Assembly (NCBI RefSeq): GCF_963921235.1
Contig: NC_086111.1
Coordinates: forward strand, 37,448,001-37,512,000
Length of the DNA: 64,000 bases
Source: Mobula hypostoma
Taxonomy: Eukaryota
Direction of reading: 5' to 3'
In this document: positions 1,376-60,175 of the stretch, piece after piece
Layout: each line of letters opens with the position of its first letter
Numbering within the stretch: position 1 is the stretch's first letter
Program-made: the position numbers and the translations under genes
The notes under the pieces: generated by a model
Databases searched by the model: none
What the model saw: only the letters and a program-made list of their open reading frames with translations
Told to the model about the DNA's origin: nothing

Positions 1376-1760
1376 AATTTTTAAAAGAGAATTATTTGTA
1401 TGGGGAAAAACAAATGCGACATCAGTCTGGTATATCATTGTGTTCCAGACACACAATGAGTGCTTCTGAAATAATATTTGTCTTGAGGTCTACTAAAATT
1501 CTGTTCTAGAATAACAAGGTTTAGATGTCCTTCATTTGGGGTTCTGTTTTAGGATTCCCAGCAGCAGATATAAAGTCTGCTTGTTCTCACAAATTCATTG
1601 TCAGCAGAAAAAAAAGAGAGCAATCCAAATTTAAATATATCTCAAAAGTGCAGAATGTTTCAAGTAGGGGACAAAGAATATCATCACTTTTGGAGTGCAT
1701 TCAACAGCATCTCAGCTCCTCCACAATCATTTTCAAAGTTGAAGGCTCACAGGGTATTAT

Positions 1761-1910
1761 AGAAAATGCTGGAAATAATTAGCAGGTCATGCTGCAGTGA
1801 AGAGATATGATGGATGGCCTTCAACCTGAAATAATAATTCCTGTTTTTCTTGTCATAGATGCAGCATCATCTGCTGAATATTTCCAGCATTTTTCTGTTT
1901 TAATCTGGAA
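1761..1910. mobile_element. Old fold-back Penelope pLTR remnant
   Basis: agaaaatgctggaaata...agcagg at the left and atctgctgaatatttccagcatttttct at the right are inverted copies of the same pLTR end. Confidence 0.55.
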
Positions 1911-2264
1911 ATTAAATGTTTCTTTCCTAAACACTACATATTAAGAGTTTTCATTGCTTGTAGAACATTGATGATGCTGGCGTTCCACCACTGCACTGAA
2001 GCGTGGAAAGAACTGCATAGTGTTGGACAGAAATTACTTGTAGGCAGAACAGGAAAAGACTGCTTGCATGGGTTAACTTAAGCAATAACACTTGCAGATG
2101 GATTTCCTTCTGAACTTGGCTAGATCTATTTCAAAGATCTAGGCACTCATTTTAAACAAAAGATGGAATTTGAAATTTTATATCAAAACAGAAAATGCTT
2201 GATGAATACTACCTCACTATTTTTATTTATATTTTTTGCACTATATATGTATGTATGATTATAG

Positions 2265-2865
2265 GTTGATTGGTTGGTTGGTCGGCATCTATCTGTCTCA
2301 AAAGCCAATGGGTGATGATGATCATCATCACAAGCCTGGGTGGAAGGTATGGAGAATGGAGAACCTGTGATACCCAGTCATCAAGGTCCCCCTCTCGGCC
2401 TCACCAGTGTAGTCCAAAGGGATGTTCATGAAGCAATACGTTTGGCACCAGCTTGTCTACAGGAGCTGCCGGATGGATGTTCAGTGATGTCCAGCTGCCT
2501 CAGGGGCTCCACTCCGAATTTGCTGTCTGGTTTTACTCCCGTAGCTTTCATCTCCCCCAAGGCTGCCACAACACAGTGGCGCTATTTACTCATCTGGTTG
2601 ACGAGCACCAGGGCGTGTGTACACGCTGGTGGGCTTGCGTGCTACTTGTGCAGGGGCCAGACCACCCCCACCCCCCAGCCCCGTCCTCTGTAGTTCACCC
2701 TGAGTCCAAAAGGTGTTCAGTTTCCGTGTGTCGCCAGTGAGGGGGCACCACATGAGGCTTGCTGTTGGAGAGGCTGTGTACTGGCAGGGAGAGACTTACA
2801 CATTCAGCTCTCCTTTTCACAAGACTGCTAGCCAGCGGTGGAAGCTGAACATGACAGTGAGAGTG
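2265..2865 (-). mobile_element. Non-autonomous RTE-derived retroposon (RTE 5'UTR joined to 3' tail)
   Basis: Minus strand ends ccattggcttttgagacagatagatgccga + (ccaa)n tail, like RTE 3' ends; internal gtttggcaccagcttg...ggagctgccgga resembles an RTE 5'UTR; no ORF. It appears to interrupt a Rex1-like tail. Confidence 0.55.
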
Positions 2866-2867
2866 AA

Positions 2868-2990
2868 TACTTACTGTAATTCACAGTATCTTTTCCCCTA
2901 TATTATCATGTGTTGCATTGTACTGCTGCCTCAAAGTTAACAAATTTCATGACATATGCCAGTGATATTTAACCTGATTCTGATTCCGAT
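2868..2990 (+). mobile_element. Rex1/Babar-like LINE 3'UTR
   Basis: ...caaatttcatgacatatgccagtgatatttaacctgattctgatt tail, same as 5100-5185 and the reverse complement of 44362-44450. Confidence 0.65.
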
Positions 2991-3151
2991 CAATCTGAGA
3001 AGTTCTTCGTGTTTCTCTCTCCAAAAATACTGTCTGACCTGATAAGTTCATGAATCATTTCCAGTTTTTATTTTGAATTTCTAACACTTTTGAAATATTA
3101 AAGGTATTGCCAATACCACTTGGTTAATCTTTTAACTCCTTTGAACTATTT

Positions 3152-3254
3152 CAATTTTTATTTCCAATATATGTGGAGCCATAATATTAATGGTGTGTGC
3201 ATGAGTGTATACATACAATACACATACGCAATATCTATGCATATTTCTGTATTC
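3152..3254. repeat. ~100-bp direct repeat, copy 1
   Basis: Matches 4098-4200 with about 3 mismatches; the two copies flank a solo LTR. Confidence 0.9.
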
Positions 3255-4099
3255 TGTGACAAGAATACACATAAATTAAGATGTTAACTGTCCTGTGGAA
3301 TCAGCAGTTGGTCTGCCACCTGTCTTCAGGAGAGAGAGAGATAAGGAAAACAATGGAGCAGCATTTGGAGATGTGTAATGAAGGGACGGGAGAGAGAGTA
3401 ACAGAAAGAGAGCTGTCAAGAGCGGCTCCCCCTTTGAACCCTGAACTGTTTGAAGTGATGGACAGGCGATACCCCAGCAGGGGGATAAAAAGGGACAGGT
3501 TTGCTGAGGCAGGACACACATGACACCCAAGGTAACGAGACCCTGGAAGTGGTGCGCCTCTCACAAGTTGGTGGGAAGCTTTTGGACGGCTGATCGCGGG
3601 ATCAAGCCATAGACGCTCAGGGTGGAAAGGCACGATCGGCGGGAACCTGGTGTGTGTCCACCCTTGCCTGGGTGCCAGGTTCAGCGCAGGGAAACGATCG
3701 TATCTGGAAACGGAGGGGTCACGGTCGGTGACCTCAGATGACATCACAAAGGGCTCGCCCGAAAGCTGACTGCGAAGGTCTGTGTGTGGAAGCCGTTTGA
3801 ATATTCATTCGTTTTGCTCTCTCTCTCCTTCCCCCCGCTGTCTGCGAACTGAACTGAACTAAAATTGAACTGAACTTTGCGTCACTTTGAAATTGGTCAT
3901 TTACCCCTAGACAACGATAGAGCTTGATTGATCCTGTTATCTTAATTCCGTGCACATGTATGTTTATCATTGCTGAACTGTTGCATTTATTACCCTTTTG
4001 ATTAGAGTACTGTGTTGCTTGTTTCTTTAATAAAACTTTCTTAGTTCTAGTAATCCAGACTCCAACTGAGTGATCCATTTCTGCTGGTTTGGCAACCCA
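3255..4099 (+). mobile_element. Solo LTR family A, 3'-truncated
   Basis: Starts TGTGAC, has AATAAA at ~4029 and shares long blocks with 60176-60990 and the reverse complement of 6496-7353; lacks the terminal gttacggggtacgtaaca. Confidence 0.85.
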
Positions 4100-10209: not shown

Positions 10210-13200
10210 TGTTGCATCTCTGCAACTACATATCAAATAAATAAAAACACACACTTGGAGATGAAGTTAACTCCTATACTCACTTTGCAGAGAGAGCTAC
10301 AAATCAAAGCATATGGCTAAGTTATCAGTCAATAATTGGTGTTAAGGGGAGTCATTTCACTAAAAGAAATAGATCTGTACACTATTCTTCTTCCCCCTTT
10401 ACATTAACGTAACATAAAACTGTAGATGTAATGACACATTCAATTTCCCTTAACAGACCATGTTCAAATAAGCATGCTTTTGCAATAACAGTGTTTGATT
10501 GATATTTTTCTTAAATAAGAGTCCATAATTAACTTCACTATACTAAAGACCCAGTCTTTTGGGTGGCGCTCTGTTTCTTTGAGGATAGTACCTCTGGATC
10601 TGTGGGGTTGCATCAGGTTTGGCAGGTGTCTTGTCAAAGGCAACTTTCTCTGGTGTCACATTGCTGTTAGTGATGTGATCATCGCTGAGAGGTAAGTCCA
10701 GTGGACGCAATGTGTCCGTCTTGTTGGATGCATACGACCCAGGTGTGTTCTTTGGCTGTGAATCCAGTATCTGGTCTACATGACGTCTCCATGTATGATC
10801 TCCAACATCCACTGTGTATATCGGTACTCCGGTTCTTGTAGCTAGCCGACCGGGTGTCCAATTGTCTTCTCAGTAATTATGTGTTTCCTGCCCAACCTCA
10901 AAGCTCCTTGCTGATTTCCTGCTCATGAACAGCATTACAAGTGTTTGATTTGTCATCATATGAACAGAGTTCCGATTCACAAAAAGGAAGTTGTTCACCT
11001 TATGCTGAAGAGTAATGTCCCTCTTGTCCATAGCTTTAAAGGGCTTCTTGAAGGTTTGGATAAACCTTTCAGCTAACCCATTCGTTGCTGGACGGTAAGG
11101 AGCTGACTTGAAATGTTTGATGCCATCTATCTAGTCTGCACTCTTCTGATGTGTACTGTGGTCCATTGTCATTCACAATTTGTTCATGTAAGCCATTTAT
11201 AAAGATAGTCCTCGGTGCGGAAACAGTATTTTCTGATGTGGTTGACTTCATTAGAGTGACCTCAGGCCACTTCGAATGAGATGCCACACCAATCAGAAAC
11301 ATGGAGTTCATGAATGGCCCAGCAAAGTCAATACGTACTGATTGCCATGATGAAGACGGCTTCTCCCATGGGTGTAAAGATGCTTGTGGGAGTGGATTTT
11401 GAACTTTGTAGCAACCTGAACAACTCTTGGCCAAGTCTTCGATCTGTTTATCCCTTCTCGGCCACCACATGTAGCTCCAGGCAAGACTTTTCATGTTGAC
11501 TGTACTCAAGTGTCCTTCATGCAGTTCCTGTAGCACTCTGGTGCACAGTTTAGAGGGAACCGCAACACAAGATCAACACATCAGCGTTCTTTGGCATACA
11601 GACAGTTGGTCTTGTCTCACTGAGATCTCTGGAAACATCAGGTTACCATGATCCAGCCATCCTTAAATGATGACGTCATACACTTTTGACAATGTCAGGT
11701 CATTCCTTGTTTCTCTTTGTATTTCAGAATTTGTTACCGGTTGCTGGTTGGTCCACCTCTGCTGTGTGGAACACCTCTGCTGGGTCACAGAATGAAGACT
11801 TTTCTTCTTCAGTTGTCAGTGGAAGATGAGACAAGCCATCAGTGTTGCTGTGTTGTTTGGGACCCTTGAACTCTATGTCAAGGGTCCTAGGAAATGGGCT
11901 CCTAGGAAATAGCGAGCTCTTAGTGGGCTCCTTGGAAATACGCCCAACATTGCAACTGGGTAGCAGACAGCACTGAGATCTCCCTCCTGGGATTGAAAAT
12001 GGAAACAGGGACTGGTGATCAGTCACTAGAGTAAACTTTTGTCCGTAGAGGTAGTGGTGGAACTTCTTTAATCCCTATACTGGACTAAGGACTTCTCAGT
12101 TGATCTGTGTGCAGTTGCGTTCTGCGCTTGTCAGTGATCCTGAAGCAAATGCAATCTGACGTTCAGGCCCATCCTTCATAGTATGTGAAAAAACAGCACC
12201 AATGCCATAAAGGGACGCATCGCATGCTAGTCTGATGGGCAGAGATTGGTCATAATGGGTGAGCAGTTCATATGGTGTTATTAGTCTCTTTGTTTTCTTG
12301 AATTCTCTTTCACAGCTTTCTAAGCACTCCTATTTTGCTACTGTCTGCAACAATGCTTTCAATGGGTGTAGCACCGTAGCAAGATTTGGGAGAAACTTAG
12401 GGTAATAGTGTACAAGGTCCAAGTATGACATGAGTAATGGCCCATTTTCCAGTTTGGCTTCCTGCAGCATTGTTTCAATCTTCTCTTGTGACATATATGA
12501 GCCATATTTGTCAATGACATGTACACAATATGAGATTTCATTCTTGAAAGCTCATATTTGTCTCTTGTTGTGCACAGACCATACTCACTCATCTTGGTAA
12601 GTTCTTTACCAAGGTCCAGATGTGTTCTTCATTATTCCTGCCAGTCACAATGATGTCATCAAGGTAATATTGTGTTCCTGGGTTATCTTGGCGCATTTGG
12701 TCCATTGGTCTTTGCCAAATTGCTAGAGCTGATGCGACGTCAAAGATGAGACGATTATACTGGAACAGTCCCCTGTGAGTATTGATTGTGAGGAACTTCC
12801 TGCTTGACTCCTCAATCCCCATTTTCAGATAGGCTTGTGACAAGTCAATCTTTGAAAACCTCTCTCCACCTGCTAAAGATGCAAAAATGTCTTCTATTCG
12901 TGGCAGGGGACTCTGCACAGCACGCAGCACAGGGTTGATGCGCACTTTGAATTCCTGCATATGTAAACAGCTCCAGCCTTCCTTTGCTTAATCACCAGGA
13001 CAATGGGTGTGGCCCAATCACTCCATTCACCCTTGGAAAGAATGCCAGATGCCTCCAAGTTCAGCATCCATCAAGCGCACTTTATGGAATCTTTCATTCA
13101 GTTCAATTCTGGCCTTCATTCCTTTGAGTTTACCAATACCCTTCTCAAACACCTTCTCATTAGCATTAAGCAGTTGTGACAGTCTCTGGTTAGTGCTGCT

Positions 13201-44361: not shown

Positions 44362-46818
44362 TCAGAATCAGAAATAAAGAACAGGTTTATTATCACCGGC
44401 ATGTGTCGTGAAAATTGTTAACTTAGCAGCAGCAGGTCAATGCAATACATGATAACATAGAAAGAGGAAAATAAATAAATAAATAAACAAACAAACAAAC
44501 AAACAAACAAACAAATGCCATACTAGATCTAGTACTAGGTAATGAACCGGGTCAGGTCACAGATCTCTCAGTGGGTGAGCATCTGGGGGACAGTGACCAC
44601 CGCTCCCTGGCCTTTACCATTATCATGGAAAAGGATAGAATCAGAGAGGACAGGAAAATTTTTAATTGGGGAAGAGAAAATTATGATGTTATAAGGCTAG
44701 AACTTGCGGGTGTGAATTGGGATGATGTTTTTGCAGGGAAATGTATAATGGACATGTGGTCGATGTTTAGGGATCTCTTGCAGGATGTTAGGGATAAATT
44801 TGTTCCGGTGAGGAAGATAAAGAATGGTAGGGTGAAGGAACCATGGGTGACAAATGAGGTGGAAAATCTAGTCAGGTGGAAGAAGGCAGCATACATGAGG
44901 TTTAGGAAGCAAGGGTCAGATGGGTTTATTGACGAATATAGGGTAGCAAGAAAGCTTAAGAAGGGGCTGAGAAGAGCAAGAAGGGGGCATGAGAAGGCCT
45001 TGGCGAGCAGGGTAAAGGGAAACCCCAAGGCATTCTTCAATTATGTGAAGAACAAAAGGATGACAGGGGTGAAGGTAGAACCAATTAGAGATAAAGGTGG
45101 GAAGATGTGCCTGGAGACTGTAGAAGTGAGTGAGGTCCTCAATGAATCCTTCTCTTCGGTATTCACCAATGAGAGGGAACTTGATGACGGTGAGGACAAT
45201 ATGAGTGAGGTTGATGTTCTGGAGCATGTTGATATTAAGGGAGAGCAGGTGTTGGAGTTGTTAAAATACATTAGGACGGATAAGTCCCCGGGGCCTGTCG
45301 GAATATTCCCCAGGCTGCTCCACAAGGCGAGGGAAGAGATTGCTGAGCCTCTGGCTAGGACCTTTATGTCCTCGTTGTCCACGGGAATGGTACTGGAGGA
45401 GTGGAAGGAGGCAAATGTTATCCTCTTGTTCAAAAAAGATAGTAGGGATAGTCCGGGTAATTATAGACCAGTGAGCCTTACGTCTATGGTCAGAAAGCTG
45501 TTGGAAAAGATTCTTAGAGATAGGATCTCTGGGCATTTAGAGAATCATGGTCTGATCAGGGACAGTCAGCATGGCTTTGTGAAAGGCAGATCATGTCTAA
45601 CAAGCCTGATAGAGTTCTTTGAGGAGGTGACCAGGCATATAGATGAGGGTAGTGCAGTGGATGTGATCTACATGGATTTTAGTAAGGCATTTGACAAGGT
45701 TCCATATGGTAGGCTTATTTAGAACGTCAGAAGGCATGGGATCCAGGGAAGTTTGGCCAGGTGTATTCAGAATTGGCTTGCCTGCAGAAGGCAGAGGGTT
45801 GTGGTGGAGAGTGTACATTCGGATTGGAGGGTTGTTACTAGTGGTGTCCCACAAGGATCTGTTCTGGGATCTACTTTTCATGATTTTTATTAACAACCTG
45901 GATGTGGGGGTAGAAGGGTGAGTTGGCAAGTTTGCAGATGACACAAAGGTTGGTGGTGTTGTAGATAGTGTGGAGGATTGTCGAAGATTGCAGAGAGACA
46001 TTGATAGGATGCAGAAGTGGGCTGAGAAGTGGCAGATGGAGTTCAACCTGGAGAAGTGTGAGGTGGTACACCCCAGAAGGACAAACTCCAAGGCAGAGTA
46101 CAAAGTAAATGGCAAGATACTTGGTAGTGTGGAGGAGCAGAGGGATCTGGGTGTACATGTCCACAGATCCCTGAAAGTTGCCTCACAGGTAGATAGGGTA
46201 GTTAAGAAAGCTTATGGGGTGTTAGCTTTCATAAGTCGAGGGATAGAGTTTCAGAGTCACGGGGTAATGATGCAGCTCTGTAAAACTCTGGTTAGGCCAC
46301 ACTTGGAAGTACTGTGTCCAGTTCTGGTTGCCTCACTATAGGAAGGATGTGGAAGCATTGGAAAGGGTACGGAGGAGATTTACCAGGATGCTGCCTGGTT
46401 TAGAGAGTATGGATTATGATCAGAGATTAAGGGAGCTAGGGCTTTACTCTTTGGAGAGAAGGGGGATGTGTCATGGTCCCTTCTGGCAATCCCCCAACTT
46501 GCCATTTGCCTCAAGAATTGGGCCTCAATCACCTCATTTAGATTCCAATCTTTCCCAGTTTCCACTAACTACACGCACCTGCTTCCCATCAGAAATGGCA
46601 GGATAAAAACCCTGTGACCACCTTAAGAAGCTGCCAGTTTGTTGGTTGACTCTTGTGAGAGTAAACCTTGTTTCCTATTCCTGAGAACTGTTAGTTCTAA
46701 GCTTCGCATTGTCTCCTGGATATCGGCTCCCCGTTTGCGGAGGTGCTACATCTAACGATTCTGCTTCAGCATCTGTGTCCTGCACTTGGGTTCGTCCCCA
46801 GCCACGTCCTTGCAACAG

Positions 46819-48727: not shown

Positions 48728-49136
48728 GAACCCCTCAACTTGTCCCGCGTCCCCACAGAGTACCATGACTTGGGACTGGTGTTCAGTAAACAACGGGCCC
48801 TTTCCCTGCCTCCGCACCGCCCATAGGATTCTGCCATCGACCTTCTCCCCGGGGCCCCGCTTTTTCAACCTATCCCGACCGGAGAGGGAGGCCATGGAGA
48901 AATACATTAGCGAGTCTCTCGCGGGCGGGCATTATTAGACCTTCATCCTCGCCGGTAGGCGCCGGGTTTTTTTTGTAGAAAAGGACCGGACGCTTCGCCC
49001 TTGTATCGACTACCGAGGCTTAAATAACATAACAGTTGAGAACAAGTACCCTCTACCACTCATTAGTTCGGCTTTTGAGCCACCGCATGGAGCCACTATC
49101 TTTTCGAAGTTGGACCTTCGCAACGCCTACCTTTGA

Positions 49137-49232
<96 letters not shown>

Positions 49233-52200
49233 TGACGTACTGAGGGACTTTATCAATCGATTCGCATTTGTCTACCTTGACAACATCCTGATATTTTCTA
49301 GCAGCCCCCAAGAACACGTACGCCATGTCCGTCAAGTTCTCCAAAGACTATGGGAAAACCAGTTTATTTGCTGAGGCGGAGAAATGCGAATTCCACGTTC
49401 CTTCGGTCAGCTTCCTAGGCTATAATCATTGAAAGCGGGCGGGTAAAAGCAGACCCTGAGAAGATCAGGGCAGTGGAAGAATGGCCTCGACCCACGACAC
49501 GCAAACAACTTCAACGATTCCTGGGGTTTGCAAACTTCTATCGTAGATTCATCAGAGACTCGTCGAGTGGCGGCACCCCTTACCCGGTTTACCTCGCCTA
49601 CCACACCGTTTTGCTGGGACTCAGAAGCGGACTCGACATTCACCGAACCGAAGAGGCGTTTTACCACCGCTCCCATTCTGGTCCATCCAGACCCGTCACG
49701 CCAATTCATCTTTGAGGTGGACGCCTCTGACTCCGGGGTAGGAGCGGTCCTATCCCAACGGTCAAGGTCGGACGGAAAGCTTCACCCCTGCTCCTTCTAC
49801 TCCCGCCGAGCGGAATTACGACTTGGGAATCGGGAACTGCGGGCGGTCAACCTAGCACTGGAAGAATGGTGGTTAGAGGGGGCACAGCACCCGTTTGTGG
49901 TATGGACTGATCATAAGAACCTGGGGTATATTCAGACCGCCAAACGATTGAACTCCTGCCAGGCACGTTGGGCATTGTTTTTTGGGCGGTTGAGGTTTAC
50001 GCTCACGTACCGTTCGGGATCCAAGAACGCGAAGCCGGACGCGCTGTCCCGCCAGCATGACTCCAAGGATGACACCTCCAGTCCCGAGACGATCTTCCCA
50101 CCTTCCTGCGTGGTTGTCACTCTCACTTGGGAGATCGAGGCTAAAGTAAAGGAAGCCCAGCGGGCCGACCCCGACCCGGTTAATGGACCCGGCGATCGCC
50201 TGTACGTGCCCACCTCCGTCGGGTTCCAGGTTCTCCAATAGGGGCACACATCCCGGTTCGCCTGCCACCCCGGGAGTGATCGGACCCTGGCTCTCCTAAG
50301 GAAGCACTTTTGCTGGCCGTCCATGGAGGGGGACACCCGTTCTTATGTCTCAGCTTGTTCCATGTATGCCCGGGGAAAGGTCTCTCATTGACCACCTGCG
50401 GGGCTACTTTGTCCTCTTCCTGTCCCTGGTCGCACATCGCCTTAGACTTCGTCACCGGTCTACCCCCTTCCCGCGGAAACACCACGGTCCTCACCGTGGT
50501 AGACCGATTCTCTAAGGTGGTGCACTTTGTGGCGCTCCCTAAACCTCCTTCTCTCAGGAAACCGCAGATATTCTGTCCGCCACGCCTTCCACCTCCATGG
50601 AATCCCCGCGGACATCGTCTCCGATCGAGGTCCCCAGTTTGTCTCGCAAGTATGGAAGGCCTTCTGCTAAGCCTTGGGCGCATCTGTCAGCCTGTCTTCC
50701 GGCTTCCGCCCCCAGACGAACGGGCAGACGGAACGGGCAAACCAAGACCTGGAGGCGACGTTTCATTGCGTAATGGCAAACAACCCATCGACCTGGAGCG
50801 GCCACCTCCCGTGGGTTGAGTACGCCCACAACTCTCTGGTGAGCTCTGCCATTGGGAGGTCTCCGTTCGAATGCTCCCTTGGGTACCAACCCCCGTGTTT
50901 CCCGCGCAAGAAGAGATTGCAGTACCGTCAGTTCAGGACCATATTAATCGGTGCCTTAAGATTCGGGAGGAGACAGGCACGGCCCTACTCAAATCAACAA
51001 ATCAAAATAAGAAGACAGCCGACCGACACTGCATCCCGGCGCCGGGAGTACCAACCTGGGCAAATGGTGTGGCTGGCCTCCAAGGACATCCGGCTCAAGA
51101 ACGAACATAGAAAACTCGCCCCTCGCTTCCTGGGACCATTCAAGGTTGAAAGGGTAATCAATCCCACAGTGGTCCGCCTAAAGCTGCCTAGATCCATGCG
51201 CATCCACCCAACCTTTCATATGTCTCAGTTAAAGCCAATTTCCATCAGTCCTCTGTGTCCCCCTGCCGAGAATCCCCCACCTGCCCGTATCATCGGCAAC
51301 CATCCAGCGCAGGGGTTTCCAATACCTGGTGGACTGGGAAAGGGTACGGTCCAGAAGAGCGTCCTGGGTTCCCCGCTCCTTCATCCTAGACCCTTCCCTC
51401 ATCCAGGATTTTCATCGGGACCATCCAGACAGGCCAGGAGGATTGCCTGGAGGCTCTCATTGAGGGGGGATACTGTCATGGTCCGTTCTGGCAATCCCCC
51501 ACCTTGCCATTTGCCTCAAGAATTGGGCCTCAATCACCTCATTTAGATTCCAATCTTTCCCAGGTGCCACTAACTACACGCACCTGCTTCCCATCGGAAA
51601 CTGCAGGATAAAAACCCTGTGACCACAGTATAAAGCTGCTAGTTCGTTGGTCGACTCTTGTGAGAGTAAACCTTGTTTCCTATTCCTGAGAACTGTTAGT
51701 TCTAAGCTTCGCATCGTCTCCAGGATATCAGCTCCCCCCCCCCCATTCGCGGTGGTGCTACGTCTAATGACTCTGCCTCAGCACCTGTGTCCTGCACTTG
51801 GGTTCGTCCCCAGCCACGTCCTTGCAACAGGATGATAGGAGACATCATAGAGGTATACAAGATATTAAGAGGAATAGATAGAGTGGATAGCCAGCGCCTC
51901 TTCCCCAGGGCACCACTGCTCAATGCAAGAGAACATGGCTTTAAGGTAAGGGGTGGGAAGTTCAAGGGGGATATTAGAGGAAGGTTTTTTACTCAGTAGT
52001 TGGTGTGTGGAATGCACTGCCTGAGTCAGTGTTGGAGGCAGATACACTAATGAAATTTAAGAGACTACTAGACAGGTATTTGGAGGAATTTAAGGTGGGG
52101 TGTTATATGGGAGGCAAGGTTTGAGGGTTGACACAACATTGTGGGCTGAAGGGCCTGTACTGTACTATTGTGTTCTATGTTCTATAAATAAGTTACAATG

Positions 52201-56150: not shown

Positions 56151-57303
56151 ATTTTGAACTTGGGGTTTTATACTTCTATTAATTTGGGTCGTGCATGAAG
56201 GACAAGCTCAGCGACTGAATATGTAGGACCACAGCTTCATTTTTTTTATATAAGGCTCAGATCTATCACAAATATTAGGTGACCTACTGAATATTTTCTG
56301 CATTATTTCCATTCAGAGTTCCAGTATTTTTCTTCTGGTTAATTCAATGTTGCTTCACTCACAGAAGTGATCACCTTGAAGTAGCTCTGTTGTCTTTCCA
56401 TTGGCCCCTTCTACTTATCTATTTAATGTGAGCACCTTCGTCATTGCTTGTCTCTATTTTCATCTTTGACTGCCAAAACTTGATTTCAAATCTTCATCTG
56501 GTGCTGGTCCTGATTTATTCCACATACATTCCAATATACAAGTGGATATCCGACACATACAGCATTACTCCTAGGCTAAGGCCATTCTCCTACACACAGA
56601 GTGGAGTTAGTAACTCATTAATTTTCTACTCCTGCCCTGCAGCTCTGATATGACTCTTCTGTTTGCTGTGTGGGAGACCATGAAGGTACAGTGATTGAAA
56701 CCTGAGCATCATCCTGTTGTCCATGTTGAGTTGGGGAAGGAATGGATCATCCCCATTTTGACCCCCATTCGTATTAACCTCAGAACCACAAACCAACATG
56801 TGGTTGCATGTCACTGCACTCTCCTTCATGTGAATTTGCTGCCAAATGTAAAAGCATGTTCTAAGGATGTCTATTGTCTCTGTAATGTGTTGTGATTCAA
56901 TTTCAGCAACAGAAAATAAATTCCTGTCAAGTTTAAATGTCAGTTTGCATTCCTATTATTTCTATTATACTATAGTTTAATATTTACTTTATTTAGCAGA
57001 TTAGGACACAAAAGGATGATTCAGTTAATATCAAAGTGGAAAAGGTAGAAACAACTGTCAAAATGAATGTGGCTTTAACTGATTTTTAATACAATTGAGG
57101 GGGGGGGGGGAAGCAGAACTTGTGAAAGCCTAAGCTATGTAGTCAGAAATATATACAAGTTGAGCACTCCTTATCTGCAAATCCAAAGTCTAAAAACCTC
57201 TGAAATCCTAATTTCGTCACCACAAATGGAAAATTCCACAAGGCGCTGGGAAGGTTCCCAGGTGTGAGAAGAGACCTCACAAACCCTGAGTGGACTCTTT
57301 TGG

Positions 57304-59395
57304 TGTTGCATTTGTTCTTAATAAAGACAAACTTGGCATGGGTATACACTAGAATGTTTTATTACTGAACTCTGTTCAATGCTGAGCACGTGCAACCAGG
57401 TCACCATCGAACCTTTCTGATCCAGGGGAACCGCCCGCATTGCCCACTGCAAACTGAAGTTCCTTTATTATGCACACGAAATAACACATCTTCCCCCTTA
57501 AAAGAAAAACACAGGACTATATCCTCGTAAACTTGTAAGGAACAATAATCCTTTCTAAGAAAGGTATCTACATTTTGTAGCCAGTTCTTTTATCACTCAT
57601 CAATATTCAATTGCTCTCTAAGGTGGTATAATGGACCCTTTTTGTCTGCTATTTGCTTCCACAGGTGTGTTCCTTGTATTTGGTGCACTATTATTAGTGT
57701 CTTTCTGAGAACTCTGATATTGTTCATTTCTTTCACATCCTTCTACCAAGAACCTATCTGTTTGTCTCTATTTTTGTTCTTGCTGCGTGACAATAATTTG
57801 CTCCATGTGCCTCAAAATGGAACCCTGGACCGCATCCATGTGATCAGTGAGTCTTCGCACAAGCTCCAATTGATTCTGTCTCAATTCACAGAGCTCCCTG
57901 TGTTGACTGTGTATCATAGATAGCAACTCCTCCTGTTGGTTTGTGTTGAATTGTTGCTTTTGTTCTGACCTTGGGGACTGTGTGGTCTTCCCATCTTCCT
58001 GTTTATTCTTCCTCTTTAACTTCAGAGAGGATGGTGGAGATACCTTTGACATCTAGTCTTTAACTGGAAGTCAATGAGAGGCTGATTTTGAACCAAAGCT
58101 GCATGATGTGGAAGCAATACTGACAACTTCTTCATCATGATCACTGTTCAGCACTGGCATCCTGATTGTCGTGCTGGTGTAGTCGATACAGAAGGTGGAG
58201 TTTTTGTGCTTCTCTTGCATAACCTCTATGGAGCTCTCATGGATACTGTTTCATGAGGTATAGTAAGCAGACAAACCCCTAAGAGACATCTGTGTACTCT
58301 TCCATGAGTGTTGGTGGTTATCTTTCATCTGTGAAGCCACTACAGCAACTTTTCATGAGGATGTGCTTTTCACATGCACTCAAACCTAATATTATCTGTA
58401 CTTTCTCTTCTACAACCAGTAGCCGCACCTTTAGGTGCTGTCCCTTGTGCTTGAAAGTCCCTTTTACTGAGTCTCTCCAGTATGGCCTGCTACTTTTTAA
58501 CTTCACTGGGTAAATCCTGCTCTCTACTTTGAGAGTTTTGTAATCACCAGTGGATAACAGATTCACTTGGGCTCCTATGCTAAGCTTGAATGAAATTGCT
58601 GTCTCATTCACAGTCACTGGAACAATCCATTCTGTTTTACCAGCACCAGGCGTTTGTAGAGAATTGACAAAGACTTCCTCCATTTCCTTATCAAATGTGT
58701 GCACCTTTCCCTTGGTAGCCCCAGCTTTACAGCTCAGCTAAGTATTGGTCAAAACTAACAACTTGTTTCTGGACACAGGAAAAGATCTTGTCTCTCAAAC
58801 ATGATGTTTTTGCTTGCGACAAAATACTCCTCAAATTTTCTCATCAGAGTAAAAGCTGTCAGTTCAAATTGAAAGCTGTTATAGATATCCAAAGCTTCTT
58901 CACCAATTAAATGCAGGAAGATACACACTTCAAATTTTTCATCTGTCCCTCCTGCTCCACTAGCCACTAAATATATATTGAATCGCCATTTGAAGCATTT
59001 CCAGTTATCTGTTAGATTTCCAGTAAATTGCATAGGTGCAGGAGGACTTAACTTATCCATGATGGCAACTTTCGGTCTTCCACCTGAATTTCTTGGTGAA
59101 TCCGGTGAACTTCTAAAACACTCGCTTCTCTCTGTCACTGGCATCTCTTTCTCAGTCGCTCATGATATTCATTTAGTCTCTGTGTTTAGATCTCCCACCA
59201 GATTCTGACACCATATTATGTTTGTTCTTAATAAAGACAAACCTGGCATGGGTATACGCTAGAATATTTTATTACTGAGCTCTGTTCAACACTGAGCACA
59301 TGTGACAAGGTCACCATCGAAGCTTCCGGATACAGGTGAACCACCCAGATTGCCCACTGGGAATTGAATTTCTTTATTATGCACACATAATAACA
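57304..59395 (-). mobile_element. Non-autonomous Gypsy LTR element carrying a captured host mRNA fragment
   Basis: LTRs 59214-59395 and 57304-57486 (~86% identical by manual count); PBS TGGTGTCAGAA 59203-59213; PPT 57489-57500; gag N-terminus TGNLTDNWKCFKWRF, protease FKLSIGAQVNLL...ILGLSAC; RT, RNase H and integrase core absent. Confidence 0.92.
57718..58262 (-). pseudogene. EDC4: Processed fragment of EDC4 (enhancer of mRNA decapping 4 / Ge-1) inside the LTR element
   Basis: Translation ESSIEVMQEKHKN/HLLYRLHQHDNQDASAEQ/DHDEEVVSIASTSCSFGSKSASH*LPVKD*MSKVSPPSSLKLKRKNKQEDG...SQHRELCELRQNQLELVRRLTDHMDAVQGSILRHMEQIIVTQQEQK*RQTDRFLVEG is collinear with human EDC4 as recalled (ESPRNGLQEKHK...DSQDASAEQSDHDDEVASLAS...RLPAKDWKTKGSPRTSPKLKRKSKKDDG...QQRELAELRHSQEELLQRL...RHEQEQRRLERALAEG); three stops and frameshifts. 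Confidence 0.88.
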
Positions 59396-60175
59396 CAGTT
59401 AGCACCAATTTGTTTTCAGCAGTCATCATAGCCAGACATTTGTGCATTACTCACAGTGATTACCATGTGTTCTGCGCTTCTTCTCTGCTCTGGGCTGTGA
59501 AGACATTGTTCAAAATGTCAAAAAGGCCACAGTCACCCCTATGGGTAATAGTGAAAAGAAAAAGAGGAAGCATTTATATTTATCTATAACAGAGGAAGTC
59601 AAGTTGTTGGAAATTCTTGACAGTGGTGTGAGTGTGAAGTATCTGACAGAGGAGTATGGTGTTGGAACAACCACCATCTGCCACCTGAAAAAACAAAAGG
59701 ATAAGCTGTTAAAGTTTTATGCTGAAGATAATTTAAGAATTTAATGAAAAATAGAAAAACACTGCAAAAAGTGAAAAATGAAGATTTTGATTGTGTATTG
59801 ACTGAATAGATTTGTCAGCTTAATGGTATGCTTATGAAACAAGTAAAGATTCTATCAGAATGCACTGAAAATTGAAGGTAATTGTGCATATTCAGCAGGC
59901 TGGTTGAATAACTTAAGGGAAGGTACGGGAATATCTTTTAAAAGATTTCTGGTGATAATGCGTCTGCTGATCACAAAACAGCAGAGAAATTGAAAGGTTA
60001 GAGCAGCTTTCATTCACAAGCGATCATGATAGTTTATAAAATCAAAGAAAAATTGTTAATGAGGCAGATGATAATGAAGAAACATTTTAAGTCATTCAGC
60101 ACAGTGCCTCCGCCTCCCGTGAACATCTGCTTCCAAGTCCCTCAACCTCTTCTGATGTTCCTCCTCACAATGATG

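What the first reader, a model, noticed from the sequence alone, without database searches (positions are those of the whole stretch)
57304..59395. Gypsy element that has captured part of the host mRNA for the P-body scaffold EDC4
Seen: between intact cis signals (two LTRs, PBS, PPT), gag and protease remnants end at the start of the RT region (EEYTDV..G..CL, ~58265), followed by ~540 bp in sense orientation that translates collinearly to EDC4 (about human residues 835-1010 by recall: the DASAEQSDHDDEV acidic patch, the KLKRKxK basic motif and the start of the helical coiled-coil domain), then the integrase tail. No intron interrupts ~180 codons of a gene with many small exons, so a spliced mRNA template is inferred. 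Established: LTR elements can capture cellular mRNA by RT template switching; EDC4 scaffolds the decapping complex in P-bodies; yeast Ty1/Ty3 particle assembly is linked to P-body components. Inference: a transduced host RNA-decay gene fragment in a non-autonomous LTR family, which may have been amplified. This copy is dead (stops at 58071-58073, 58053-58055, 57768-57770).
Basis: partly seen in the sequence, partly recalled or inferred. Interest (0 to 1): 0.85.

Follow-up and report, generated by a model that had tools for sequence, protein, structure and literature searches.

The report
Stingray retrotransposon carrying spliced EDC4 fragment
A dead, enzyme-less Gypsy-type jumping gene in a stingray genome carries an intron-free piece of the host decapping-scaffold gene EDC4 in place of its own polymerase, and this chimera spread to many copies in several related species; the process is already known, and nothing shows the EDC4 piece does anything.

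Summary
On the minus strand, window 57304-59397 is a 2.1-kb non-autonomous LTR element. It has two ~180-bp LTRs (87% alike), a PBS, a PPT, a truncated gag, a protease remnant and the first ~15 codons of RT. Then come 537-553 bp (57714-58250/58266) that match EDC4 residues 836-1018 (tblastn E 7e-69 against stingray EDC4).

Against the skate EDC4 locus, this stretch splits into six consecutive exons with all five introns (0.4-2.4 kb each, about 9 kb in all) absent. The template was therefore spliced mRNA. There is no poly(A).

The "integrase tail" (57509-57713) found no support.

The chimera is amplified. Thousands of diverged contigs from three species, and some from a fourth, lie on it, including the EDC4 part. 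Summed depth there is about 100 times the single-copy flank. A second species holds a ~96-97% identical copy with the same flank.

This copy is dead: three stops, two frameshifts and a lost protease active site. Its EDC4 part looks neutrally decayed.

The mechanism, LTR-mediated retroposition by RT template switching, is already published for yeast, maize, flies, fish and mice. This is a new member of a known kind.

The scan has not noted EDC4 elsewhere. It has noted captures of other host genes by Gypsy elements in this genome, which argues against an EDC4-specific or P-body story.

The parts
59219..59397 (-). 5' LTR (179 bp, TG...CA)
   Evidence: Direct repeat. 86.6% identical to the 3' LTR, K2P 0.149. 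The LTR end is conserved in L003 and L004.
59196..59213 (-). Primer-binding-site-like sequence (TGGTGTCAGAATCTGGTG), 5 nt after the LTR
   Evidence: Read from the sequence. The core TGGTGTCAGA is identical in relatives L003 and L004. The primer tRNA was not identified.
58730..59144 (-). Gag remnant: N-terminal ~115 codons, with one frameshift. The C-terminal capsid part and the CCHC knuckles are missing.
   Evidence: ORF 58755-59144. 66% identical to L002 gag residues 4-102, and a second piece in another frame (58795-58730) matches residues 94-115. Four gag relatives at E 1e-29 to 1e-33.
58730..58731 (-). Internal deletion breakpoint: about 350-390 bp present in relatives L002 and L003 (gag C-terminus plus zinc knuckles) is absent here
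   Evidence: L002 gag residue 115 abuts L002 pol residue 37 in the window. Spacing compared in L002 and L003. A pile of loose ends at 58731 in run X12.
58318..58731 (-). Aspartic protease remnant. The active site DTG reads SIG in this copy.
   Evidence: tblastn of L002 pol residues 37-207, E 2.8e-36. Weak Pfam Asp_protease_2, E 0.04.
58264..58317 (-). Stub of the RT N-terminus (..LMEEYTDVS*GFVCL), where retroelement homology ends
   Evidence: Aligned to L002 ..LMTEFKDVFEGLGCL. L002 continues into RT; the window does not.
57714..58266 (-). Captured spliced EDC4 mRNA fragment (residues ~830/836-1018). Certain from 58250; 58251-58266 is a possible extension with TTAC microsimilarity.
   Evidence: tblastn E 1.7e-65 and 7.5e-69. 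Five blastn HSPs, each to one consecutive exon of the skate gene, 77-86% identity. About 15 nt of a sixth, upstream exon.
58236..58250 (-). EDC4 exon piece a: last ~5 codons of the large exon encoding residues 689-840
58146..58235 (-). EDC4 exon b (residues 841-874). It has a 10-nt gap against skate and the two frameshifts of this copy.
   Evidence: Many other copies carry extra letters at 58143 and at 58182-58190 (table 4).
57990..58145 (-). EDC4 exon c (residues 875-926). Stops at 58071-58073 (CGA to TGA) and 58053-58055 (TGG to TAG).
57957..57989 (-). EDC4 micro-exon d (residues 927-937)
57770..57956 (-). EDC4 exon e (residues 938-1000)
   Evidence: Other vertebrates' genomic fragments run into an intron right after QQEQE.
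57714..57769 (-). EDC4 exon f, first 56 nt (residues ~1000-1018). Stop at 57768-57770.
57509..57713 (-).
   Evidence: No Pfam hit. No match elsewhere in the window. Not EDC4. Summed depth is about a third to a half of the insert's, and some copies join 57508 to 57721 without it.
57489..57499 (-). Polypurine tract AAGGGGGAAGA, abutting the 3' LTR
57304..57488 (-). 3' LTR. The outer end is uncertain by about 3 nt (57304-57307).

Best explanation
This is one old, dead copy of a non-autonomous Ty3/Gypsy-type LTR retrotransposon family of stingrays. Its pol gene, from about codon 15 of RT onward, was replaced by about 540 nt copied from a spliced host EDC4 mRNA.

The most likely origin is inferred, not shown. 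Inside a virus-like particle, reverse transcriptase was copying the element's RNA from the 3' end. It switched template to a co-packaged EDC4 mRNA at about codon 1018, copied back to about codon 830-836, then switched back to the element's RNA at the very start of RT, possibly through a 4-nt TTAC microsimilarity.

The resulting chimera kept both LTRs, the PBS, the PPT and the 5' leader and gag region. Enzymes supplied in trans by autonomous relatives could therefore copy it again. That accounts for its spread to roughly 100 or more diverged copies in at least three species.

The copy in this window inserted long ago (LTR K2P 0.149) and is also present in a second species. Since then it has decayed neutrally.
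For: Shown:
- EDC4 identity.
- Six consecutive exons joined with no intron, 77-86% nt identity to skate exons.
- Closest proteins are stingray EDC4s, 81.6% over 141 aa.
- Sense orientation, an internal CDS piece, no poly(A).
- Retroelement homology ends at RT residue ~15 of relative L002.
- L002 carries a Ty3-like RT (4OL8, E 1e-40) and RT_RNaseH_2.
- Intact-looking cis signals, conserved in relatives.
- Amplification: 3930, 2596 and 3498 contigs of runs X1, X5 and X12 lie on the element at 80% identity or more. Summed depth on the insert is 1544-3729 against 18.8 on the unique flank in X1, and 50-84 distinct contigs differ from this copy at single insert positions.
- Contigs of organism B cover flank, LTR, tail and insert (57235-57930) and the 5' junction (58091-58523) at about 96-97% identity (records 25, 26, 32).
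- Neutral decay: 26 of 141 residues differ from stingray EDC4, plus 3 stops. dN to skate is 0.105. About 0.03 of that is my rough estimate of skate-stingray protein divergence, counted by eye from the alignment. The remainder matches half the LTR distance, about 0.075.

Established knowledge: microsimilarity-driven RT template switching creates such chimeras, and they can undergo further rounds of retroposition (PMC5131818).
Against: - The template-switch step itself cannot be observed.
- The microsimilarity at the 5' junction (TTAC) is short. It rests on a skate EDC4 sequence and a distant relative (L002), not on the true parents.
- The 3' switch point cannot be examined, because no autonomous 3' end of the family was obtained.
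- Summed contig depth is not a copy number (tool warning).
- Depth dips to about 10 times the flank exactly at the 5' junction (58270-58275). So I cannot say what fraction of copies share this junction.
- The target-site duplication is not recognisable.
Confidence: 0.8

Rival explanations
1. Oncogene-style transduction. An element integrated in or upstream of EDC4, and a read-through or deletion-derived chimeric transcript was packaged. Only one non-homologous RT switch, at the 3' side, joined it back to the element.
For: The end product would be the same: sense orientation, spliced host sequence, pol replaced. This is a well-established route for acutely transforming retroviruses (general knowledge).
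Against: The 5' junction lies inside an exon, 5-11 codons from its 3' end, and inside the RT coding region. It is not at a splice site or an LTR boundary. This route needs a rare prior insertion in EDC4. The same genome reportedly holds captures of several unrelated genes by Gypsy elements (unchecked), which fits promiscuous co-packaging better.
Confidence: 0.1
2. A DNA-level event. A LINE-made processed EDC4 pseudogene was inserted into, or recombined with, an already deleted LTR element, and the composite was then amplified.
For: It would also give an intron-free insert.
Against: There is no poly(A), no 3' UTR and no 3'-end bias. The insert is an internal 13% of the CDS. It exactly replaces pol in the correct orientation and order. 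No duplication flanks the insert.
Confidence: 0.05
3. The EDC4 piece was kept because it works. It would be expressed as a Gag-PR-EDC4 fusion or as RNA, and would steer the element to decapping or P-body factors, or blunt host RNA decay. That would explain why the chimera outnumbers its autonomous kin.
For: - Insert depth is about as high as gag depth, so the EDC4-bearing form dominates the family at 80% identity or more.
- Many copies carry the letters that this copy lacks at its two frameshift sites (table 4).
- The fragment includes the start of the proximal helical region that mediates EDC4 oligomerisation and DCP2/XRN1 binding in human (PMC4005699).
Against: - By human domain bounds, and assuming stingray and human numbering roughly coincide (not checked by alignment), only about 45 residues of that 290-residue region are present. 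The rest is disordered linker.
- In this copy the EDC4 frame is offset by one from the PR/RT frame at the junction.
- This copy's changes look neutral.
- No RNA run was listed as holding it.
- Non-autonomous LTR families often outnumber their partners without any cargo function (general knowledge).
Confidence: 0.05

Closest known systems
LTR-mediated retrocopies of animals (Tan et al. 2016, Genome Res 26:1663; PMC5131818)
   Same: A partial, spliced, sense-oriented host mRNA piece replaces part of the internal ORFs of an LTR retrotransposon. There is no poly(A). Both LTRs are retained, and the chimera behaves as a pseudo-LTR element that can be retroposed again.
   Different: Those cases are young and have one or a few copies. 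Here the chimera is old (LTR K2P 0.149), is shared by several species, and is present at roughly 100-fold the single-copy depth. Microsimilarity at the switch points could not be established here.
Maize Bs1 (Elrouby & Bureau 2001, 2010, as cited in PMC5131818)
   Same: A non-autonomous LTR element with gag and protease remnants that carries transduced host exon sequences and has been re-transposed with the same switch points.
   Different: Bs1 carries pieces of three genes and has 1-5 copies per Zea genome. This element carries one identified gene piece, plus an unassigned 205 bp, and has far more copies.
Acutely transforming retroviruses (v-onc capture)
   Same: Spliced host coding sequence replaces pol/env in a replication-defective LTR element that a helper mobilises.
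   Different: There is no evidence of selection for the cargo's function. The captured piece is not a functional domain. The carrier is an endogenous Gypsy-type element, not an infectious retrovirus.
Other captures noted by this scan in the same genome (RABEP1+SH3KBP1, RBM25, myosin heavy chain)
   Same: Gypsy LTR elements with pol replaced by spliced host mRNA, according to those notes.
   Different: Different host genes. I could not check whether they share this element's LTR and gag lineage or its RT breakpoint.

Membership tests
Ty3/Gypsy (Metaviridae) LTR retrotransposon | Two direct LTRs with TG...CA ends | tested here: met
   179 and ~182 bp, 86.6% identical, TG..CA.
Ty3/Gypsy (Metaviridae) LTR retrotransposon | PBS just inside the 5' LTR and PPT just before the 3' LTR | tested here: met
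   The PBS core is conserved in L003 and L004. The primer tRNA was not identified.
Ty3/Gypsy (Metaviridae) LTR retrotransposon | Target-site duplication of 4-6 bp | tested here: inconclusive
   the flanks CTAAC and ACACC/CCAAA match at only 2-3 of 5 positions. The element is old.
Ty3/Gypsy (Metaviridae) LTR retrotransposon | Gag and retropepsin-type protease | tested here: met
   strong homology to the gag and PR of relatives. Pfam on the window copy alone is weak. The active site is mutated in this copy.
Ty3/Gypsy (Metaviridae) LTR retrotransposon | Ty3-type RT and RNase H, with integrase after RNase H | tested here: inconclusive
   Absent from this copy by deletion. Relative L002 has an RT closest to Ty3 (4OL8, E 1e-40) and RT_RNaseH_2. 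The contig ends before any integrase, so the gene order is untested.
LTR-mediated retrocopy / gene-transducing pseudo-LTR element | Host sequence replaces part of the internal retroelement ORFs, with retroelement sequence on both sides in normal order | tested here: met
   The 3' side is certain only for PPT plus LTR; the 205-bp tail is unassigned.
LTR-mediated retrocopy / gene-transducing pseudo-LTR element | Host sequence lacks introns (RNA template) | tested here: met
   five exon-exon junctions of the skate gene are crossed, and introns of about 0.4-2.4 kb are absent. The host species' own locus is over 100 kb and could not be fetched.
LTR-mediated retrocopy / gene-transducing pseudo-LTR element | Microsimilarity at the switch points | tested here: inconclusive
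   a possible TTAC overlap at the 5' junction, based on non-parental sequences. The 3' junction is untestable without an autonomous 3' end.
LTR-mediated retrocopy / gene-transducing pseudo-LTR element | Further retroposition: many copies sharing the same junctions | tested here: inconclusive
   multi-copy status of the insert is clear. Contigs in four runs cross 58270-58275, and a ~96% identical contig of a second species spans the 5' junction. The short contigs do not let me count how many copies share both junctions.
L1/LINE-type processed pseudogene | Poly(A) tail, 3'-end-anchored copy, and a flanking target-site duplication around the retrocopy | tested here: not met
   an internal CDS fragment (residues ~836-1018 of 1398), with no A-run at its 3' end and no flanking repeat.

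The most novel reading that the evidence does not exclude
The EDC4-bearing chimera did not merely hitch-hike. The linker plus first-helix fragment of the decapping scaffold, made as a Gag-PR-EDC4 fusion or acting as RNA, helped the element reach or disarm P-body and decapping factors. That would be why this form dominates its family in several stingray species.

A weaker but likelier version: this stingray Gypsy lineage is unusually prone to swapping pol for host mRNAs, and has produced a whole set of amplified chimeric families, of which EDC4 is one.
Probability: 0.06. Interest if true: 0.8.

Novelty: new member of a known kind. Interest (0 to 1): 0.38.

Why it matters
This is a clean vertebrate example of LTR-mediated capture of a spliced host mRNA. 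It has well-defined exon junctions and a defined breakpoint at the first codons of RT, and it shows later amplification to high copy number across species, a stage rarely documented in animals.

On its own it adds a case, not a principle.

It becomes more interesting in two situations. First, if the several capture families noted in this genome prove to stem from one Gypsy lineage with a recurrent RT-start breakpoint, which would point to a mechanistic hot spot for template switching. Second, if hundreds of EDC4-sense and antisense copies feed small-RNA pathways that touch the parental EDC4 mRNA.

Tried and rejected
- PDB sequence search, Pfam and the ESM Atlas on the 94-aa ORF gave nothing. 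This EDC4 region has no domain model and no solved structure.
- A word-index protein search with the 94-aa ORF found no candidate, because of the tool's length window. So no other captured copy could be fetched as a protein.
- The short hits P0004-P0014 looked like possible extra captured copies. They are single genomic EDC4 exons of other vertebrates that run into the intron.
- There is no second copy in the 64-kb window.
- The stingray EDC4 loci (Hemitrygon, Hypanus, Mobula) are over 100 kb and were not delivered. Exon structure therefore rests on the skate gene.
- The tail 57509-57713 was tested as integrase and as a continuation of EDC4. Both tests were negative.
- A protein tree places the insert among batoid EDC4s but does not resolve where. 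Site patterns conflict: N is shared with dasyatids, while S and Q are ancestral where all four sampled stingrays have T and H.
- Rfam found nothing in the window.
- The first read-laying run was lost to a filter at 59550-59591.
- No RNA run was listed as holding the stretch. This is not evidence of silence.
- Whether EDC4 was originally in frame with PR/RT cannot be told from this copy. The two frames differ by one at the junction.

Full report
**What is there**

All features lie on the minus strand. Window 57304-59397 is bounded by two direct repeats. Aligned end to end (59219-59397 against 57305-57490), they are 86.6% identical, K2P 0.149, and begin TG and end CA.

Five bases inside the 5' LTR lies a TGG-initiated PBS-like site (59196-59213). 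Its core and the adjacent LTR end are conserved in two related contigs, L003 and L004. A purine run, AAGGGGGAAGA (57489-57499), abuts the 3' LTR. No target-site duplication can be recognised.

**The retroelement part**

Pfam alone barely sees the coding remnants (Asp_protease_2, E 0.04). A search with the 129-aa gag ORF found four relatives (E 1e-29 to 1e-33).

One of them sits on a 2.6-kb Logan contig, L002. That contig carries a 196-aa gag, a 497-aa PR-RT ORF and the start of RNase H. The RT of L002 is closest to yeast Ty3 RT among solved structures (4OL8, E 1e-40).

Against L002, the window shows the following:
- It keeps gag residues 4-115, with one frameshift.
- It then lacks about 350 bp: the gag C-terminus and the CCHC knuckles. 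The breakpoint is 58730/58731.
- It keeps protease, with the DTG active site reading SIG.
- It stops matching exactly after the motif ..DVFEGLGCL at the very start of RT, at window 58264.

**The host part**

The 94-aa ORF at 57771-58052 hits EDC4 of the skate Amblyraja radiata at E 2.8e-35, out of 1.8 billion proteins. Pfam (Ge1_WD40, EDC4_C) and the source names confirm the hit as EDC4.

The full collinear match is EDC4 residues 836-1018 = window 58250-57714. The E-value is 1.7e-65 against skate and 7.5e-69 against the stingray Hemitrygon akajei. The closest proteins are the dasyatid stingrays (81.6% over 141 ungapped residues), then Mobula, then skates. A tree only places the insert among batoids.

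In the skate gene (locus L001), these residues lie on six consecutive exons separated by introns of roughly 1.1, 0.4, 2.4, 1.6 and 2.4 kb. A nucleotide BLAST of the window against that locus returns one HSP per exon, abutting in the window, at 77-86% identity. About 15 nt of the upstream exon are also present.

Genomic EDC4 fragments of other vertebrates run into an intron right after QQEQE, exactly where the window continues into the next exon. The template was therefore spliced mRNA.

The piece is internal to the CDS and is in sense relative to gag and PR. It has no A-run at its end. Downstream similarity to EDC4 ends at 57714, give or take about 10 nt. Upstream it may reach 58266, where a TTAC is shared by the L002 RT stub and the skate mRNA. 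That would be a possible microsimilarity, but it is based on non-parental sequences.

**The 3' tail**

There is no Pfam hit, no match to the integrase of the other Gypsy element in the window, and no match to EDC4. It remains unassigned. Some family copies join 57508 directly to 57721 and so lack it.

**State of this copy**

Each is one base away from the EDC4 codon: CGA to TGA, TGG to TAG, CAG to TAG. There are also two frameshifts in exon b. At those places many other copies carry extra letters (table 4).

The window's EDC4 residues differ from stingray EDC4 at 26 of 141 positions. Against skate, dN is 0.105 and dS is 0.58. About 0.03 of that dN is my rough estimate of skate-stingray protein divergence, counted by eye from the alignment. 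After subtracting it, the excess nonsynonymous change roughly equals half the LTR-LTR distance (about 0.075). That is what neutral decay since insertion predicts.

**Amplification**

Logan contigs of four runs from four coded organisms were laid on 56800-59540 at 80% identity or more.

- 3930, 2596 and 3498 contigs of X1, X5 and X12 lie on the element, against 118 contigs of the small run X10.
- On the EDC4 part, summed depth is 1544-3729 (X1), 296-593 (X5) and 1033-2837 (X12). The single-copy flank gives 18.8, 3.2 and 4.56.
- At single insert positions, 50-84 distinct contigs per run carry a letter other than this copy's.

The tool warns that summed depth is not a copy number. I therefore read this only as about two orders of magnitude above single copy.

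Insert depth is about as high as gag depth, so the EDC4-bearing form dominates the family at this similarity level.

Organism B has contigs that join the same unique flank to the LTR, tail and insert (57235-57930). Another of its contigs spans the 5' junction (58091-58523). Both are about 96-97% identical, so this very insertion probably predates the split of the two species.

Depth dips to about 10 times the flank at 58270-58275. The share of copies with this exact 5' junction is therefore unknown.

**How it most likely arose**

The anatomy is the one described for LTR-mediated retroposition: a partial, spliced, sense host mRNA replacing internal ORF sequence between retained LTRs. It is created by two RT template switches in the particle, and the product is then re-mobilised as a pseudo-LTR element (Tan et al. 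2016, PMC5131818). Bs1 of maize is the classic amplified case, at 1-5 copies.

What is shown here: the chimeric structure, the spliced origin, the RT-start breakpoint and the multi-copy status. What is inferred: the template switches, trans-mobilisation by an autonomous partner, and a single capture event.

**Meaning of EDC4**

In human EDC4 the Ser-rich linker is residues 538-973. The helical domain is 974-1401, and its proximal part (974-1265) mediates oligomerisation and DCP2/XRN1 binding (PMC4005699 and PMC12265941).

I did not align the human protein, so I assume human and stingray numbering roughly coincide (both proteins are about 1400 residues). On that assumption the captured residues ~836-1018 are mostly linker, plus about the first 45 residues of the helical domain. 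That is not a complete functional unit.

In this copy the EDC4 frame is offset by one from the PR/RT frame at the junction. No RNA run was listed as holding the stretch, which is not proof of silence. Unchecked notes of this scan list Gypsy captures of RBM25, RABEP1/SH3KBP1 and myosin in the same stingray genome. That fits promiscuous capture rather than an EDC4-specific story.

**Verdict**

This is a new member of a known kind. It is of moderate interest, mainly for the degree of amplification and as one of several such captures in this genome.

Noticed in passing
window 57168-57264: A very high-copy short repeat lies just outside the 3' LTR. Summed contig depth is 7579 against 18.8 on the neighbouring unique flank in X1, with sharp loose-end piles at 57221 and 57262-57264 in all four runs. 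It is unrelated to the LTR element and may be a SINE-like repeat.
   Followed up: no
window 59541-59744 (+): A 67-aa ORF directly beside the 5' LTR has a CENP-B N-terminal DNA-binding domain (Pfam E 2.7e-4, just under the cut-off). It looks like a pogo/Tigger-type transposase remnant, and the frames downstream are decayed.
   Followed up: partly
window 48966-51546 (+), 12084-12939 (-) and 44571-45722 (+): These are other retroelement remnants. One is a Gypsy-type element with RT, RT_RNaseH and a Tf2-1-type integrase SH3 domain. A second is an RT/RNase H remnant on the minus strand, about 30% identical to L002 pol. A third is an RVT_1 ORF. None shares gag, PR or LTR with the EDC4 element.
   Followed up: partly
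window 58730/58731: Besides losing pol, the element lacks about 350-390 bp that relatives L002 and L003 have between the gag N-terminal part and protease. This includes both CCHC zinc knuckles. A pile of loose ends at 58731 in X12 suggests that related copies with the missing piece exist.
   Followed up: partly
window 57508-57721: Some family copies (3 contigs in X1, 1 in X5) join 57508 to 57721. They lack the 212-bp unassigned tail and put the EDC4 end next to the PPT region. Summed depth on the tail is about a third to a half of that on the insert. There may be two subfamilies, or the tail may be a later addition.
   Followed up: no
window 57957-58000 (EDC4 residues ~920-940): The insert reads S and Q (PRSEQKQQ) where all four sampled stingray EDC4s read T and H (PRTEQQHQ) and skates and sharks read S and Q. 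Yet it shares N in KRKNK with the dasyatids only. These are conflicting hints about whether the capture predates the dasyatid-mobulid split.
   Followed up: partly
L002 (Logan contig, 2640 bp): This is an apparently open autonomous-type relative (gag 196 aa, PR-RT 497 aa, then RNase H) from an unidentified public run. It is only 49-66% identical in protein to the window element, so it is not its direct partner.
   Followed up: partly
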